Positions 746 to 4,895 of a DNA stretch of 64,000 nt are shown piece by piece. The DNA is taken from contig OZ251225.1 in NCBI GenBank assembly GCA_965240325.2, forward strand, positions 2,480,001 to 2,544,000, in the 5' to 3' direction. A model generated the notes under the pieces. That model made no database searches. It saw only the letters and a list, made by a program, of their open reading frames with translations, and was not told the DNA's origin. Position 1 is the first letter of the stretch, and each line of letters begins with the position of its first letter. This stretch comes from Rebecca billardiae RCC1528. Taxonomy: Eukaryota; Protista; Haptophyta. The position numbers and the translations under genes are program-made.

Positions 746-1319
746 GGCGATGGTGCGTGAGCGCTGCCGGCCCCAAGAGGGCCGCCCTCCTTAGCCGCAA
801 CCCGGAGAAGGCGCGCAGCCGGACCCTCAAGACCATCCGGATGATCGGCTCGGGATCCGGCCATCGTCCCATCGAGCCTCAATCCGGAAAATGAGCCTCG
901 TTGCCCGGACTCCCGGAGCAACTCCTGAAACTTCAGCGGGTTCCGCTGAAGTTTCGTTCATCACAAGCTTGCCCCAATCGCGCGCTAAAATTGGTCGTGA
1001 TGGACCATTCTGATCGTATTATTTTCAATTTTACTCATAGGAATGCTCCATCGGCCATACTTGATTATGCGGTTACGCTTGCAACGACAGATGATGAGTA
1101 GTGCTATTAGCGCGGCGGTTTTCCACTGCCTCATACAGCGAATGCTTGCCGATGATTATATGCCGACCCAGCAGCGAATGACCAGAAGGCGCGCGATCTC
1201 GCCCGCCGCCGACGACGCGGGGCCTAGACCGCCGGGGCCGCGCCCCGCCCGGAAACACCGCCGAAACCCCACCACCCAGCGTGATTGCTGCACCCAGCAA
1301 GGAGCTGCTGGCTTGCCCG

Positions 1320-4300
1320 ATGGCACGGCGGTCAAGCCGCGGCGCACGGCGCTCGTCGGCGGAGGGGCATGACGGAGGGCGGGAGGCGGTGGCGGAGAGC
1401 GACGGGGCCGCTGAGACCTTCCCCGCCCCCCAACTCTCGCTCAACGTGCTCGACCACCTGCCATCGGCGCTGTGGCTCGGCGGTGGCGGCATCGCGTGCT
1501 GGTGTGTGATTATCACTGCGGTGCTGCGAGGGATGAGCTCGCAGGCGAGCCACCTGCCAACGGCGGAGAAGCAAGCCGCGGAGATCGCGGCGAGTATGCT
1601 CACCACCGCGTGCCTCCTCCGCGCGATTACCACCTTGGCCTCCGCCAGCAACTCCGTGCACTCGGTCATCACCATCCCCATCATGGCCGTGCAGGCGATC
1701 GCCGCGTCGTCCAACTGGGTGATGGCGACGATGGCGGTTCCCGCGCCCGTCGACCCGATCACTGGCTGCCATGTCCAGCTCGTGCGCTACGGCGAGTGGT
1801 TCTGCTGCACGTTCATCATGGCCTTTGTCATCGAGGCGATCGATAACGACGCGAGCACGTTCCCCGTCTATCTCGGCCTCTCGCAGTCCGTTTGCATCCT
1901 CTTCGGCCTCGCGTTGCCGTACGCGCCGGGGCCGGTGAGCTGGGCCGTGCTGCTCGCGCTCTCGTGCATCTTCTTCGGCGCCGTCCACATGCGCCTCTAC
2001 GTCCGCCGCCGCCAGCTATTCGCGCAGCGCGAGCCGACGAGCGTGCTCGAGAGGCTCGCGCTCGACCGGAAGAAGCTCGCTTGCCGGCTGCTGATGACGT
2101 GCTGCGTGACGTGGACGGTCGTGCTCGTCGAGTACGGGGTGGCGTGGGCGGACCACGAGCTGCACTTCTTCAGCCGCTACTACCCACACTGGCACTTCGT
2201 CGTGGAGACCGCGCTCGACGTCGTCGCGAAGCTGATGTACACCAACATTGTCGCCGACCTGCAGCTCGCGGCGCCCGAGCACGCCGAGCGGTGGCAGGAG
2301 CAGAGCCTGCGCGTGATGATGAACATCGCGTGGGAGCACTGCGGCGACGTGATCGTCGTCTCGCAGCCGCGACCGGGCGGCTGGCTGCACACGAGCGCGT
2401 CGCCCTCGCTCAGCGGGCTCCTCGGCGCCGTCCAGTCGCAGCCGTGGGTGACGGGCCAGACGCACAAACGGCTCAAGTTCGCGCAGGAGGCGGGCGAGGC
2501 TGCGAACGCGGGCGAGCGTGCCGCGTCGGGCGCGGCGGCAGCGGCAGCGCGGGCTGGGGCGCCCGCGAGCGCGGGCGGCGCCGCTCGGCCCGCGGCGAGC
2601 TGCTCCCCCGCGGCGTCGGACGACGAGACCTCCTCCCCGTCCCCGTCCTCGCGCCTCAGCCTCGACAACCCGACGCCGCTCAGCAACGAGCTGCCGCCGC
2701 TGCCGGCCGACGAGGACGGCGACGCGCTCGAGCACGCCTTCGGCATGCTCGCGTTCGACCAGCTCGTGAGCCTGGCGTGGCGGTACGTGCGCATGCGGTC
2801 GGACGGCTGCGCGCGCATCGTGTGCACGCTGAGGTCCGCCTCCGACGCGGCGGTCGCCGCGGCGGTCGCCGCGGCGCACGCGGCCGCGGCCGCGCCGGCC
2901 GCCGACGGCGAGGACGTGTCCTCGGCCGGCGCGACGACGCCCGGCCGGCTTGGGCTCGAGAAGCGCTGCGAGATCGACGTGAAGCTCGTGCGCGACACGC
3001 CGGTGGGCGACTCGCTGGTGATCATCGCGCGCGACATCAGCGACCGGATCGAGCGCCTCGAGATGGAGCGCAGCCTCTTCGAGGCCGCCGTCTCGCGGCA
3101 GAAGGACGAGGAGGCCAACCGCTTCAACCGGCACGAGGTGAAGAACGGCGTGCTCGCCGCGCTCTCGGCGTGCGACCACCTGCGCGAGGTGCGCGAGGCG
3201 GGCCTGCGGAGCGAGCTGGTCTCGGAGCGCGCGGAGTACACCTCCAACTTCAACCGCTCGCTCGTCGACCTCTCCGACTCGCTCCACTCCACGCTGAACA
3301 CGGTGCTCGCCGAGGCGATGGCGCGCGACGTCGTGCACGGCACGTACCGGCCGCAGCTCGAGGGCATCCAGCTCGAGGAGCTGCTCGGCTCGCGGCGCAC
3401 GCGGCGGGACACGCGCTTCCGCTTCATGACCGAGCCGCGGCCGCTGCCGCTGCTCGAGCTCGACCCGCGGCTCGTCTTCCACATCTACCGCAACGCCGTC
3501 TCGAACGCGACCAAGTACGGCCGGCCCGGCGGGGTCATCACGACCGAGGTCGAGTTTGCGAGCGAGACGCTCACGCTGCGCGTGATCAACGAGCCCGGCC
3601 CGGACCACGAGGCGCTGCTCAAGGTGGACGCGACGCGAGTGTTCGCGAAGGGGACGCGGCTGCACGGCGGGCTCAGCTCCGACTCGAACTGGTCGAGCAC
3701 CTCCGCGGGCGACGGCGCGTGGATCATGCGCAAGTGCGCCGAGGCGCTCGCGGGCGTGTGCGCGATCCAGTTCCTCGCCGAGTACACGGTGTTTGAGCTG
3801 CGCTGCCCGGCGCGCAAATACGTGGCGGACGTGCAGCTCGAGGGGTTCCACCTGCCCGAGGACGTGCACGGCATCGCGATCGACGACTCGCGCGTGCAGC
3901 GCATGCTGCTCACCAAGATGCTCCAAGTGCTCGGCGTGCCGCGCGAGCGCACCGTCGTGCTCGGCTCGACCTCGGACGAGATCACGTGCGTGCACGAGTA
4001 CATTGTCGACGCGGTGCGCGCCGCGCCGCCGGGGGTGCGCTTCATCGTGATGGCGGATGAGAACCTGGACTACGACGCGGGCGGCGGCGTGATCACGCAC
4101 TCGGGCTCCGCCGCGCTCGCGCGCGCGCGCAAGGCGCTGCGGCCAGAGGAGGAGGCGCGCACGCTGATGCTCGTGCGCTCGGCCAACGACTCGCCGGAGG
4201 ACATCGAAAAGTACCACACGTGCGCGCACGGCGTCGTGCCCAAGGGGCCCTTCTCGCGCACGGCCGTGCTCAAGGCGATCGTGCCTGCGTGGGTGCAGCG

Positions 4301-4895
4301 CTTCGGCGCGCCCGATCACAAGCCAGCCGAGGCCCAGGCCCCGGCGGACGCGTGCTCGAGGTCCACCTCGCGCGACATGTCGTCGTCCGCGGTGGACGAT
4401 GAGATTGTCGAGGCGCTGCGCCAGCTGCTCTCGGGCGTGGACGCGATGCTGGAAGAGTGGAACCACGTGGTGCCCGAGGAGTCGTGGCCGCTGATGTGGG
4501 TGCAGCTGCACCGCATCAAGGGCGAGGTGCTGAGCTTGACCAAGGGCAAGGGCCACTCGACCCTCTCGGGCGAGCTCACCGACGTGGTCAGCAGCATCGA
4601 GGCGATGCGCAATCTCACACGCGCGCCCGCCGACCTCGCGGCGCGCTGGGCGTTGATCAAGCGCGCGATTGGCGCGCACATCCACCTGCGCATGATGAGC
4701 AGGCTCAGCGAGCCACGAACAGCGCCGTCGAGCCCCGAGGTGTCCGATCGGCGCCTTTTGCTCAGTCGGAACCATCGCCGACGAACGGCGGAGTCGCCCT
4801 CCTCCGAGTCGCCCTCCTGGAACAGGGAACTGGAAGGTAACCCCCTACTGCGGGCGGGCTCCGCGAGGTCGAAGGCGACCGACGATGCCGAGTGA
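1320..4895 (+). CDS. Histidine-kinase rhodopsin-like hybrid sensor: 8-TM microbial rhodopsin + degenerate PAS + HisKA + HATPase + receiver + HPt-like C-terminus
   Basis: Helix C RYGEW (1785-1799). Helix G DVVAK with retinal-binding Lys (2229-2231). PAC-like IIARDISDR. H-box RHEVKN (His 3132). N-box RNAVSNATKYG. Receiver IDDS...MADENL...RSAND...VPK. HPt-like LHRIKG (His 4509). First ATG is 1320; the ORF track starts at GTG 1281. Confidence 0.85.
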   Translation: MARRSSRGARRSSAEGHDGGREAVAESDGAAETFPAPQLSLNVLDHLPSALWLGGGGIACWCVIITAVLRGMSSQASHLPTAEKQAAEIAASMLTTACLLRAITTLASASNSVHSVITIPIMAVQAIAASSNWVMATMAVPAPVDPITGCHVQLVRYGEWFCCTFIMAFVIEAIDNDASTFPVYLGLSQSVCILFGLALPYAPGPVSWAVLLALSCIFFGAVHMRLYVRRRQLFAQREPTSVLERLALDRKKLACRLLMTCCVTWTVVLVEYGVAWADHELHFFSRYYPHWHFVVETALDVVAKLMYTNIVADLQLAAPEHAERWQEQSLRVMMNIAWEHCGDVIVVSQPRPGGWLHTSASPSLSGLLGAVQSQPWVTGQTHKRLKFAQEAGEAANAGERAASGAAAAAARAGAPASAGGAARPAASCSPAASDDETSSPSPSSRLSLDNPTPLSNELPPLPADEDGDALEHAFGMLAFDQLVSLAWRYVRMRSDGCARIVCTLRSASDAAVAAAVAAAHAAAAAPAADGEDVSSAGATTPGRLGLEKRCEIDVKLVRDTPVGDSLVIIARDISDRIERLEMERSLFEAAVSRQKDEEANRFNRHEVKNGVLAALSACDHLREVREAGLRSELVSERAEYTSNFNRSLVDLSDSLHSTLNTVLAEAMARDVVHGTYRPQLEGIQLEELLGSRRTRRDTRFRFMTEPRPLPLLELDPRLVFHIYRNAVSNATKYGRPGGVITTEVEFASETLTLRVINEPGPDHEALLKVDATRVFAKGTRLHGGLSSDSNWSSTSAGDGAWIMRKCAEALAGVCAIQFLAEYTVFELRCPARKYVADVQLEGFHLPEDVHGIAIDDSRVQRMLLTKMLQVLGVPRERTVVLGSTSDEITCVHEYIVDAVRAAPPGVRFIVMADENLDYDAGGGVITHSGSAALARARKALRPEEEARTLMLVRSANDSPEDIEKYHTCAHGVVPKGPFSRTAVLKAIVPAWVQRFGAPDHKPAEAQAPADACSRSTSRDMSSSAVDDEIVEALRQLLSGVDAMLEEWNHVVPEESWPLMWVQLHRIKGEVLSLTKGKGHSTLSGELTDVVSSIEAMRNLTRAPADLAARWALIKRAIGAHIHLRMMSRLSEPRTAPSSPEVSDRRLLLSRNHRRRTAESPSSESPSWNRELEGNPLLRAGSARSKATDDAE

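What the first reader, a model, noticed from the sequence alone, without database searches (positions are those of the whole stretch)
1320..4895. All-in-one light phosphorelay: 8-TM rhodopsin-PAS-kinase-receiver ending in an HPt-like domain instead of a cyclase
Seen: eight hydrophobic segments (an extra TM0, as in enzymerhodopsins), RYGEW and DVVAK, an H-box His (3132), a receiver Asp (DENL, 4056), and a C-terminal helical region with LHRIKG (His 4509) resembling the HPt HxLKG motif. Established: characterised green-algal histidine-kinase rhodopsins (2c-Cyclops) end in a guanylyl cyclase, and none is present here. Inference: a His-Asp-His relay in one intronless polypeptide that passes phosphate to a separate regulator, i.e. 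a distinct photoreceptor architecture.
Basis: partly seen in the sequence, partly recalled or inferred. Interest (0 to 1): 0.8.

Follow-up and report, generated by a model that had tools for sequence, protein, structure and literature searches.

The report
Rhodopsin-kinase-receiver gene with HPt-like tail
This intact, intron-free gene of a very GC-rich haptophyte alga fuses a retinal-type light-sensor membrane domain to a histidine kinase, a receiver and a probable phosphotransfer (HPt-like) four-helix tail. It belongs to a large haptophyte and diatom family that standard domain searches miss and that I found described in no paper.

Summary
One ORF (ATG 1320, stop 4893-4895; 1191 aa) carries every motif at the stated coordinates. 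Pfam detects only the ATPase domain, but about 250 strong homologues let each part be tested:
- **Membrane domain:** an 8-helix enzymerhodopsin-type rhodopsin. The family profile hits rhodopsin-phosphodiesterase at E 1e-6, and the retinal lysine is kept in 158/160 relatives.
- **Kinase core:** matches E. coli hybrid kinases (hhalign 97.7%).
- **Receiver:** folds as a CheY-like domain with an odd beta-hairpin insert.
- **Tail:** a confident four-helix bundle with His1064 in an LHxLKG motif (His 87%, Lys 96%, Gly 98% of 205 relatives).

HPt identity is probable, not proven. There are repeated sub-threshold Pfam Hpt hits in the nearest relatives and a UniRef 'HPt domain' name for one homologue. 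Against that, the query itself gives no Hpt hit, the fold matches are generic, and the His was lost at least 12 times in the family.

The nearest relatives are pavlovophyte haptophytes and diatoms, not green algae, and cyclase-less rhodopsin kinases (Ostreococcus Rhod-HK) are already known. The PAS assignment is only weakly supported.

This scan has already reported at least eight paralogues elsewhere in this genome. No RNA data exist for this gene.

The parts
1320..4895 (+). Complete single-exon coding sequence, 1191 codons plus stop (4893-4895)
   Evidence: ORF list and first ATG. All family-conserved blocks are present in one frame.
1458..1541 (+). Extra N-terminal transmembrane helix (TM0), aa 47-74, preceded by an Arg-rich N-terminus that is probably cytosolic
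   Evidence: Hydropathy. The family profile aligns to rhodopsin-phosphodiesterase from chain residue 18 onward, a stretch I take to include its TM0.
1575..2255 (+). Seven-helix rhodopsin core, aa 86-312. Helix C carries R156/E159/W160 (RYGEW, nt 1785-1799). Helix G carries D300 and the Schiff-base Lys304 (DVVAK, nt 2217-2231).
   Evidence: Family profile against PDB: Rh-PDE 7cj3/7d7q at E 1.3e-6 and bestrhodopsin 7pl9 at E 4e-4. The single sequence aligns RYGEW to RFVDW and DVVAK to DIASK of a cyanobacterial chloride pump. Lys is kept in 158/160 relatives, Arg in 139/142, Glu in 135/143.
2256..3086 (+). Helical linker and PAS-like region, aa 313-589. It is interrupted by Ala/Ser/Pro-rich low-complexity inserts at about aa 385-470 and 505-545.
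   Evidence: The sequence pattern resembles PAS (consensus 'SSDVI..SV' at the start, 'RDISER' at the end). Pfam PAS_9 matches 3 of 32 relatives, best E 0.0076. Language-model features of the Diacronema homologue's region point to PAS families. Neither the query nor the family profile matches anything in PDB. Inconclusive.
3087..3299 (+). Dimerisation/phospho-acceptor helices with the H-box (FNRHEVKNG). His605 codon is 3132-3134.
   Evidence: F602, H605, E606 and N609 are invariant in 32 relatives. The motif resembles the HisKA H-box 'SHELRTP' of E. coli kinases. The hhalign local alignment did not cover this part.
3462..3809 (+). Catalytic ATP-binding domain (HATPase_c), aa 715-830. The N-box (N725, N729), F-box (F775) and G2-like box (GDG, 797-799) are present. 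The G1-box Asp position holds Asn757 (nt 3588-3590).
   Evidence: Pfam HATPase_c scores 26.5 bits against a cut-off of 26.4 when the domain is scanned alone. hhalign against the ArcB/BarA/EvgS/TorS cores gives probability 97.7%, E 2e-12.
3852..4310 (+). Receiver domain, aa 845-997, with D855/D856, phospho-acceptor D913 (nt 4056-4058), S954 and K975. A beta-hairpin insert follows D913 directly (aa 915-928, nt 4062-4103).
   Evidence: AlphaFold model with pLDDT 93-98 across the domain. All top Foldseek matches are CheY/NarL-type receivers, E 4e-5, target TM-score 0.7-0.8. The DD, D, S and K positions are invariant or nearly so. Pfam and PDB sequence searches find nothing.
4371..4691 (+). HPt-like four-helix bundle, aa 1018-1124. 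His1064 (nt 4509-4511) lies in the middle of helix 2 within LHRIKG.
   Evidence: AlphaFold model with pLDDT 88.8 and four helices. Motif conservation in 205 relatives: His 87%, Lys(+3) 96%, Gly(+4) 98%. Weak Pfam Hpt hits on the same module in P0183, P0184, P0015 and P0004. hhalign puts His1064 in register with the HPt His, P 0.015. Fold searches are generic.
4692..4892 (+). Low-complexity tail of 67 aa (aa 1125-1191), probably disordered and not conserved in relatives
   Evidence: No Pfam hit. Most relatives end at the bundle.

Best explanation
The gene encodes a membrane photoreceptor of the enzymerhodopsin type. An eight-helix retinal-binding domain (Schiff-base Lys304, counterions Glu159 and Asp300) is joined through a helical linker and a PAS-like region to a hybrid histidine kinase. 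The proposed mechanism is as follows. Light-driven changes in the rhodopsin alter autophosphorylation at His605. The phosphoryl group passes within the protein to Asp913 of the receiver, then to His1064 of the C-terminal four-helix bundle, which acts as a tethered HPt domain. From there it goes to a separate, unidentified response regulator. This is the His-Asp-His scheme of bacterial 'unorthodox' sensors such as ArcB, BarA, EvgS and TorS. Shown here: the domain architecture, the folds of the receiver and the tail, and the conservation of every key residue. Inferred: retinal binding, the direction of light regulation, and every phosphotransfer step.
For: Rhodopsin: the family profile hits rhodopsin-phosphodiesterase at E 1.3e-6 and bestrhodopsin at E 4e-4. 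Lys304 is kept in 158/160 relatives, and the Arg, Glu, Trp and Asp positions are also conserved. Kinase: hhalign gives 97.7% to E. coli hybrid kinase cores, and the H-box His is invariant. Receiver: confident CheY-like model, and Asp913 is kept in 228/230 aligned relatives. Tail: confident four-helix bundle. The motif L-H-x-L-K-G matches the HPt signature, with His 87%, Lys 96% and Gly 98% in 205 relatives that are only about 25% identical overall. Pfam Hpt is the top or only hit on this module in the four nearest relatives (E 0.003-0.008). UniRef names the Diacronema homologue 'HPt domain-containing protein', and that protein has no room for another HPt. In a language-model search, 26 of 30 named hits for that module are Hpt clusters. 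hhalign against six E. coli HPt domains aligns His to His with score 19.0; only 2 of 200 column shuffles reach this, and a Pfam-significant haptophyte HPt scores just 22.9 against the same small profile. The module sits directly after a receiver, as in ArcB-type kinases.
Against: The query's own tail has no Pfam Hpt hit. The family profile finds no HPt in PDB and no canonical HPt protein in the 5.8-billion-protein set. Structure searches rank many unrelated four-helix bundles above HPt entries; the HPt entries score Z 8.5-9.1 against a top Z of 10.9. The His is less conserved than the neighbouring Lys and Gly and was lost at least 12 times independently. The module is absent from 32 of 175 relatives. 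One close relative, from Pavlova gyrans, carries a second, canonical HPt after the module. The G1-box Asp that contacts adenine in GHKL ATPases is replaced by an invariant Asn, so normal ATP use is not assured. No RNA data exist for this gene.
Confidence: 0.58

Rival explanations
1. The relay ends at Asp913. The C-terminal bundle is a pseudo-HPt, or a docking or regulatory module that binds the receiver or a partner (for example shielding or destabilising the phospho-Asp). It does not itself carry phosphate, and a separate soluble HPt protein passes the signal on, as proposed for Ostreococcus Rhod-HK.
For: Lys(+3) and Gly(+4) are more conserved than the His. The His was replaced at least 12 times independently, most often by Gln (12 of 26 cases), while the module was kept. 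This recalls His-less pseudo-HPt proteins. A Pavlova gyrans relative adds a canonical HPt after the module. Nothing links the module to HPt at a significant level.
Against: 87% retention of a His that is probably surface-exposed, in a module only about 25% identical across the family, points to selection on that residue in most lineages, this gene included. Every weak family-level hit points to Hpt.
Confidence: 0.27
2. The eight-helix domain is a rhodopsin relic that no longer binds retinal. The protein would then be a chemosensory or constitutive hybrid kinase, not a photoreceptor.
For: Pfam Bac_rhodopsin does not match. The single sequence is only marginally similar to solved rhodopsins (E 0.1). 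Helix F lacks the bacteriorhodopsin Tyr185/Pro186 equivalents.
Against: The Schiff-base Lys is kept in 158/160 relatives. The Arg, both carboxylates and both pocket Trp positions are also kept. The Glu counterion motif aligns with 'RYAEW' of the light-active rhodopsin-phosphodiesterase.
Confidence: 0.08
3. This copy is a silent or decaying paralogue of the multi-copy family. Its long ORF would be kept open only by the scarcity of stop codons in 70% GC DNA.
For: Long spurious ORFs do occur here, for example a 919-aa antisense ORF at 2016-4775. No transcript evidence exists. At least eight paralogues are present in the genome. Unusually long low-complexity inserts sit in the linker.
Against: Every catalytic and structural residue that is invariant in the family is intact in this copy. 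GC content is higher in the ORF than in the flanks.
Confidence: 0.05

Closest known systems
Ostreococcus tauri Ot-HKR / Mamiellales Rhod-HK ('non-canonical' histidine-kinase rhodopsins)
   Same: Rhodopsin fused to a histidine kinase and a receiver, with no cyclase. The output is presumed to run through a phosphorelay to separate response regulators (PMC4343026, PMC12704426, PMC7693036).
   Different: The Mamiellales proteins are drawn with recognisable rhodopsin, HisKA, HATPase and REC domains and are paired with a separate HPT protein. Here Pfam detects only HATPase_c, the receiver has a hairpin insert, and an HPt-like bundle is fused to the C-terminus. I had no Ot-HKR sequence, so direct sequence kinship was not tested.
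Chlamydomonas/Volvox HKR1 and 2c-Cyclop (Cop5/Cop6)
   Same: Rhodopsin - histidine kinase - receiver in a single chain. These are enzymerhodopsins, a class reported to carry an extra N-terminal helix TM0 (PMC13739731).
   Different: They end in a guanylyl cyclase that the receiver controls (PMC12558739). This gene has no cyclase and has a helical HPt-like tail instead.
Rhodopsin phosphodiesterase of Salpingoeca rosetta (PDB 7cj3, 7d7q)
   Same: It is the best solved-structure match to the membrane domain. The alignment covers the N-terminal part, which I take to include TM0, and the helix C motif with a Glu counterion (RYAEW against RYGEW).
   Different: Its output domain is a phosphodiesterase, not a two-component relay.
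Bacterial unorthodox hybrid kinases ArcB, BarA, EvgS, TorS
   Same: The domain order kinase - receiver - HPt in one membrane protein, with a His-Asp-His relay. The kinase cores are demonstrably homologous.
   Different: Their sensors are periplasmic or PAS domains, not a rhodopsin, and their HPt domains are clearly recognisable by sequence. Among eukaryotes, a fused REC-HPt has been reported for some Physarum kinases and for multi-PAS kinases of an oomycete, with similar multi-PAS kinases in Guillardia and Emiliania (PMC6324907).

Membership tests
Microbial (type-1) rhodopsin, enzymerhodopsin type | Seven-helix core plus an extra N-terminal helix (8 TM) | tested here: met
   Hydropathy plus motif placement gives eight helices. 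The family profile aligns to Rh-PDE from chain residue 18 to 200.
Microbial (type-1) rhodopsin, enzymerhodopsin type | Schiff-base Lys in helix G and the Arg/carboxylate counterion set in helices C and G | tested here: met
   K304, D300, R156 and E159 are aligned to the corresponding residues of solved rhodopsins and are conserved in the family.
Microbial (type-1) rhodopsin, enzymerhodopsin type | Significant sequence similarity to known rhodopsins | tested here: met
   The single sequence gives only E 0.1 and Pfam gives nothing. The 31-sequence family profile gives E 1.3e-6 to Rh-PDE and E 4e-4 to bestrhodopsin.
Microbial (type-1) rhodopsin, enzymerhodopsin type | Binds retinal and shows a photocycle | not testable with these tools
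   Needs expression with all-trans retinal and spectroscopy.
Histidine kinase (HisKA + HATPase_c) | H-box with the phospho-acceptor His | tested here: met
   RHEVKNG with His605. H, E and N are invariant in 32 relatives. This rests on the motif; the hhalign alignment did not cover this part.
Histidine kinase (HisKA + HATPase_c) | N, G1, F and G2 boxes of the ATP-binding domain | tested here: inconclusive
   Homology is clear: hhalign 97.7% and Pfam at threshold. The N, F and G2 boxes are present, but the G1 Asp aligns to an invariant Asn757.
Response-regulator receiver (CheY-like) | (beta-alpha)5 fold with the acidic pair, phospho-Asp, Ser/Thr and Lys | tested here: met
   AlphaFold pLDDT 93-98 across the domain, and all Foldseek top matches are receivers. 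D855, D856, D913, S954 and K975 are conserved. Sequence models fail, probably because of the hairpin insert after D913.
HPt phosphotransfer domain (Pfam PF01627) | Four-helix bundle with a His in the middle of a helix within an HxxKG motif | tested here: met
   Model pLDDT 88.8, with His1064 in the middle of helix 2. L-H-x-L-K-G is conserved in 205 relatives. Solvent exposure was inferred from the hydrophobic pattern and was not measured on coordinates.
HPt phosphotransfer domain (Pfam PF01627) | Significant sequence or profile similarity to known HPt domains | tested here: inconclusive
   Query: no hit. Relatives: sub-threshold Hpt hits of 16.9-18.3 bits against a cut-off of 24.6. hhalign P 0.015, with 2/200 shuffles as high. 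Nothing in PDB or the large protein set. A UniRef name supports the assignment for one homologue.
HPt phosphotransfer domain (Pfam PF01627) | Structure closer to HPt than to other helical bundles | tested here: inconclusive
   HPt entries 1tqg, 7c1i, 4euk_B and 3myf score Z 8.5-9.1, but unrelated bundles score up to 10.9. The Foldseek and Atlas lists are mixed.
HPt phosphotransfer domain (Pfam PF01627) | Accepts phosphate from a receiver Asp and passes it on | not testable with these tools
   Needs in vitro phosphotransfer assays with His and Asp mutants.
Two-component cyclase opsin (2c-Cyclop) | C-terminal guanylyl cyclase domain | tested here: not met
   No cyclase hit anywhere in the protein. 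The ORF ends 67 aa after the bundle, and the relatives end at the bundle.
PAS domain | Recognisable PAS fold or profile match between rhodopsin and kinase | tested here: inconclusive
   PAS_9 matches 3/32 relatives, best E 0.0076. Language-model hits for a homologue point to PAS. The query gives no hit and the family profile finds nothing in PDB.

The most novel reading that the evidence does not exclude
Diatoms, haptophytes and pelagophytes possess a large, so far undescribed class of sensory rhodopsins. In this class a membrane-anchored protein runs a complete light-controlled His-Asp-His phosphorelay, so the response regulator must come to the membrane rather than being reached through a soluble HPt shuttle. 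The kinase would also have an altered nucleotide pocket (invariant Asn in place of the G1-box Asp). Family members in which the His is replaced, often by Gln, would then be built-in negative regulators.
Probability: 0.4. Interest if true: 0.8.

Novelty: new variant of a known kind. Interest (0 to 1): 0.6.

Why it matters
Diatoms and haptophytes carry out a large share of ocean photosynthesis. In the reviews I read, the sensory photoreceptors described for stramenopile and haptophyte algae are flavin- and bilin-based (LOV proteins such as aureochromes, cryptochromes, phytochromes), and I found no rhodopsin-histidine kinase reported for these groups. A rhodopsin-driven two-component relay present in many copies per genome would add a retinal-based input, probably green or blue, to their light signalling. 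It would also give optogenetics a light-gated kinase with a self-contained relay. The family shows too how far standard domain models can miss real domains: here they miss the rhodopsin, the receiver and the HPt-like tail. That would explain why a survey of eukaryotic histidine kinases that required two recognisable Pfam domains (PMC6324907) would not pick it up.

Tried and rejected
- **Full-length word-based homologue search:** found nothing. The words came from the poorly conserved, low-complexity first 500 residues. The exhaustive search and a search restricted to residues 560-1125 did work.
- **Exact-sequence look-up of the protein:** not on record.
- **Receiver and mid-region profiles against PDB sequences:** no hits.
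- **Tail profile against PDB and against 5.8 billion proteins:** only unrelated helical proteins, or fragments of the same family.
- **Structure searches with the tail model:** they cannot tell HPt from other four-helix bundles.
- **Pfam DUF7032:** it matches 11/32 tails, best E 4.7e-5 and below its cut-off. It is a domain of unknown function, so this adds nothing to the interpretation.
- **Green-algal origin:** rejected. The nearest named relatives are Pavlova gyrans and Pavlovales sp. CCMP2436 (45% identity), then Diacronema, Chrysotila and many diatoms. Only one green alga, Cymbomonas, appears.
- **A hidden cyclase or second HPt in the tail or downstream:** rejected.
- **A second copy in this window:** none.
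- **Expression:** only one public run holds fragments of the locus. It is not RNA, and coverage is a few short contigs.
- **Language-model search on the query's own parts:** failed because the service was busy. A homologue was used instead.
Full report
**Observation.** The + strand holds one open frame from 1281 to 4895. Its first ATG is at 1320, which gives a protein of 1191 residues. Hydropathy gives six clear membrane segments. Helices C and G carry charged residues and were placed by their motifs, which makes eight in all. GC content is 0.67-0.72 across the frame and falls to 0.51-0.60 downstream. The window holds no second copy.

**Why standard tools see almost nothing.** Pfam finds only HATPase_c, at the threshold (23.5 bits in the whole protein, 26.5 bits for the domain alone, cut-off 26.4). 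NCBIfam gives only faint kinase matches. A language-model search of the whole protein returned hybrid histidine kinase / response regulator clusters. The exhaustive search of 1.8 billion cluster representatives found 779 relatives, 248 of them below E 1e-30. They are typically 1000-1250 aa and 33-46% identical, and their alignments usually run to about residue 1117, that is to the end of the helical tail. All domain tests below use alignments of these relatives.

**Membrane domain.** On its own, the sequence is only marginally similar to a cyanobacterial chloride-pump rhodopsin (E 0.1), but the alignment pairs RYGEW with RFVDW and DVVAK with DIASK. A 31-sequence family profile hits the rhodopsin phosphodiesterase structures 7cj3/7d7q at E 1.3e-6 and bestrhodopsin 7pl9 at E 4e-4. 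The Rh-PDE alignment starts at chain residue 18, so I take it to include the extra N-terminal helix. It pairs the family's 'RWaEW' with 'RYAEW' of that enzyme, so the counterion is Glu rather than Asp. Among 164 relatives, counting only those with a residue at each position:
- the Schiff-base Lys is kept in 158 of 160;
- the Arg in 139 of 142;
- the Glu in 135 of 143;
- the helix F Trp in 154 of 156;
- the helix G carboxylate is Asp or Glu in 151 of 160.

The position of the bacteriorhodopsin proton donor is hydrophobic, as expected for a sensor and not a pump. I read this as a retinal-binding, enzymerhodopsin-type domain. Pigment formation itself is inferred.

**Linker and 'PAS'.** After helix G comes a conserved helical stretch and then a region whose start ('SSDVI..SV') and end ('RDISER') resemble PAS domains. 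Support is weak:
- PAS_9 matches 3 of 32 relatives, best E 0.0076;
- language-model features of the Diacronema homologue's region point to PAS clusters;
- the family profile finds nothing in PDB.

In this gene the region is interrupted by long Ala/Ser/Pro-rich inserts.

**Kinase.** The H-box (F602, H605, E606, N609) is invariant in 32 relatives. The catalytic domain aligns to the ArcB, BarA, EvgS and TorS cores with hhalign probability 97.7%, E 2e-12. The N-box Asn residues, the F-box Phe and a G2-like 'GDG' are conserved. The G1-box Asp aligns to an invariant Asn757. From general knowledge of GHKL ATPases, that Asp contacts the adenine amino group, so nucleotide use by this family deserves a direct test.

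**Receiver.** Sequence models fail. The AlphaFold model built with the family alignment is nonetheless very confident (pLDDT 93-98 across the domain). It shows a (beta-alpha)5 fold with a beta-hairpin inserted right after the phospho-acceptor. All top Foldseek matches are CheY/NarL-type receivers (E from 4e-5, target TM-score 0.7-0.8). D855, D856, D913, S954 and K975 are invariant or nearly so, and Asp913 is kept in 228 of 230 aligned relatives.

**The tail.** Residues 1018-1124 fold, with pLDDT 88.8, as four helices, and His1064 lies in the middle of helix 2. In 205 relatives the motif is L-H-x-L-K-G-D-L: His 87%, Lys at +3 96%, Gly at +4 98%. Overall identity of the module is only about 25%. 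H-x-x-K-G is the signature of HPt domains and is present in all six E. coli examples I aligned except for single replacements.

Evidence for HPt kinship:
- Pfam Hpt is the top or only hit on this module in P0183, P0184, P0015 and P0004 (E 0.003-0.008, 16.9-18.3 bits, below the 24.6-bit cut-off), and it matches 7 of 32 members at E<10.
- UniRef calls the Diacronema lutheri homologue 'HPt domain-containing protein'. That protein has only 48 residues after the module, so the name must refer to the module.
- 26 of 30 named language-model hits for that module are Hpt clusters.
- hhalign against six E. coli HPt domains puts His on His with score 19.0 (P 0.015). Only 2 of 200 column shuffles reach this. 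A Pfam-significant HPt from Pavlova gyrans scores just 22.9 against the same small profile, so this test has little power.

Evidence against:
- The query's own tail has no Hpt hit.
- The family profile finds no HPt in PDB or in the 5.8-billion-protein set.
- Structure searches rank unrelated bundles (Z up to 10.9) above the HPt entries (Z 8.5-9.1).

**Family-level behaviour of the tail.** On a tree of the kinase-receiver region (175 rows, FastTree), the His was lost at least 12 times by well-supported branches. The module is absent from 32 rows, some of which may be truncated gene models. The commonest replacement is Gln, in 12 of 26 cases. The Pavlova gyrans relative has the module at 919-1008 and a second, canonical Hpt domain further on (27.7 bits when scanned alone, above the Pfam cut-off). 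These facts keep open the rival view that the module is mainly a receiver-docking or regulatory pseudo-HPt. Still, 87% retention of one residue in so divergent a module argues that it is functional in most members, and this gene has it.

**Organism and family range.**
- Nearest named relatives: Pavlova gyrans and Pavlovales sp. CCMP2436 (45% identity over the kinase-to-tail part; both also represented by MMETSP transcripts).
- Other haptophytes: Diacronema lutheri and Chrysotila/Pleurochrysis.
- Diatoms: many, including Cylindrotheca, Seminavis, Nitzschia, Fistulifera, Epithemia, Cyclostephanos, Mayamaea, Ditylum, Amphora and Rhizosolenia.
- Others: Pelagophyceae sp. CCMP2097 and one green alga, Cymbomonas.

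On the tree the query sits in a well-supported clade of 29 rows (support 97) together with the pavlovophyte sequences. The source is therefore a pavlovophyte-like haptophyte, not a green alga.

**Comparison with what is known.** Histidine-kinase rhodopsins without a cyclase are already known. Ostreococcus Ot-HKR/Rhod-HK and its Mamiellales relatives are drawn as Rhod-HisKA-HATPase-REC and are thought to signal through a separate HPT protein to TOC1 and other regulators (PMC4343026, PMC12704426, PMC7693036). A 2026 survey separates 'canonical' from 'non-canonical' HKRs and also lists 17 clusters that contain only uncharacterised rhodopsins (PMC13739731). Fused REC-HPt kinases have been reported in eukaryotes for some Physarum kinases and for multi-PAS kinases of an oomycete, with similar multi-PAS kinases noted in Guillardia and Emiliania (PMC6324907). 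That survey required two recognisable Pfam domains, a filter this family would fail. In four full-text searches and the papers and reviews I read I found no description of a rhodopsin-kinase family in diatoms or haptophytes, nor of an HKR with a fused HPt. An open-ocean metatranscriptome study reports that rhodopsin-histidine kinase transcripts were not detected (PMC8017926).

**Earlier findings of this scan.** The scan has already reported at least eight paralogues of this family on other pieces of the same genome. The follow-up agents reached similar readings, and one paralogue has a His-less tail. This gene is therefore one more member, with the His intact. My tests were run independently on this locus.

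**Limits.** No RNA run holds this gene. A single public run, not recorded as RNA, contains a few short low-depth contigs, two of which match exactly inside the gene. Retinal binding, kinase activity and every phosphotransfer step are inferred.

**Verdict.** The gene is a new variant of a known kind: an enzymerhodopsin-type hybrid histidine kinase with a probable fused HPt. Confidence in the architecture is about 0.9, and in a working His-Asp-His relay about 0.55-0.6.

Noticed in passing
window 17432-45847: A tandem array of about 28 kb made of GGC-rich units (period 114 and 342, about 250 and 52 copies). It has GC 0.86 and GC skew +0.43. It may encode a giant Ala/Pro/Ser-rich repeat protein, or it may be non-coding satellite.
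   Followed up: partly
window 3588-3590 (Asn757): In the hhalign alignment to E. coli kinases, the G1-box Asp of the ATP-binding domain (DxGxG) aligns to Asn ('NxPG'). This Asn is invariant in the 24-32 relatives aligned. It may change nucleotide binding or specificity.
   Followed up: partly
window 4062-4103 (aa 915-928): The receiver carries a confidently modelled beta-hairpin insert directly after the phospho-acceptor Asp, flanked by invariant Glu-Asn and Gly-Ser. This probably explains why Pfam Response_reg fails, and it sits where it could affect phosphotransfer or dephosphorylation rates.
   Followed up: partly
protein P0183 (Pavlova gyrans transcriptome), residues 919-1008 and 1101-1175: This close relative carries the family's helical module and then a second, canonical Hpt domain (27.7 bits when scanned alone, above the Pfam cut-off). 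Only one other of the 205 relatives has a long tail with a further HxxKG motif.
   Followed up: partly
family alignment of 205 tail modules (position of His1064): Where the His is replaced, the commonest substitute is Gln (12 of 26 cases), with Lys and Gly retained. This recalls His-less pseudo-HPt proteins and the amide residues used by some phospho-Asp phosphatases.
   Followed up: no
window 2016-4775, minus strand: A 919-aa antisense ORF overlaps the gene. Its Arg/Ala/Gly/Pro-rich translation looks like a by-product of 70% GC DNA, not a gene.
   Followed up: no
window 2472-2729 and about 2832-2954 (aa ~385-470 and ~505-545): Long Ala/Ser/Pro-rich low-complexity inserts lie inside the linker/PAS-like region. 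They put this paralogue's linker at the long end of the family range (245 aa against 142-277).
   Followed up: no
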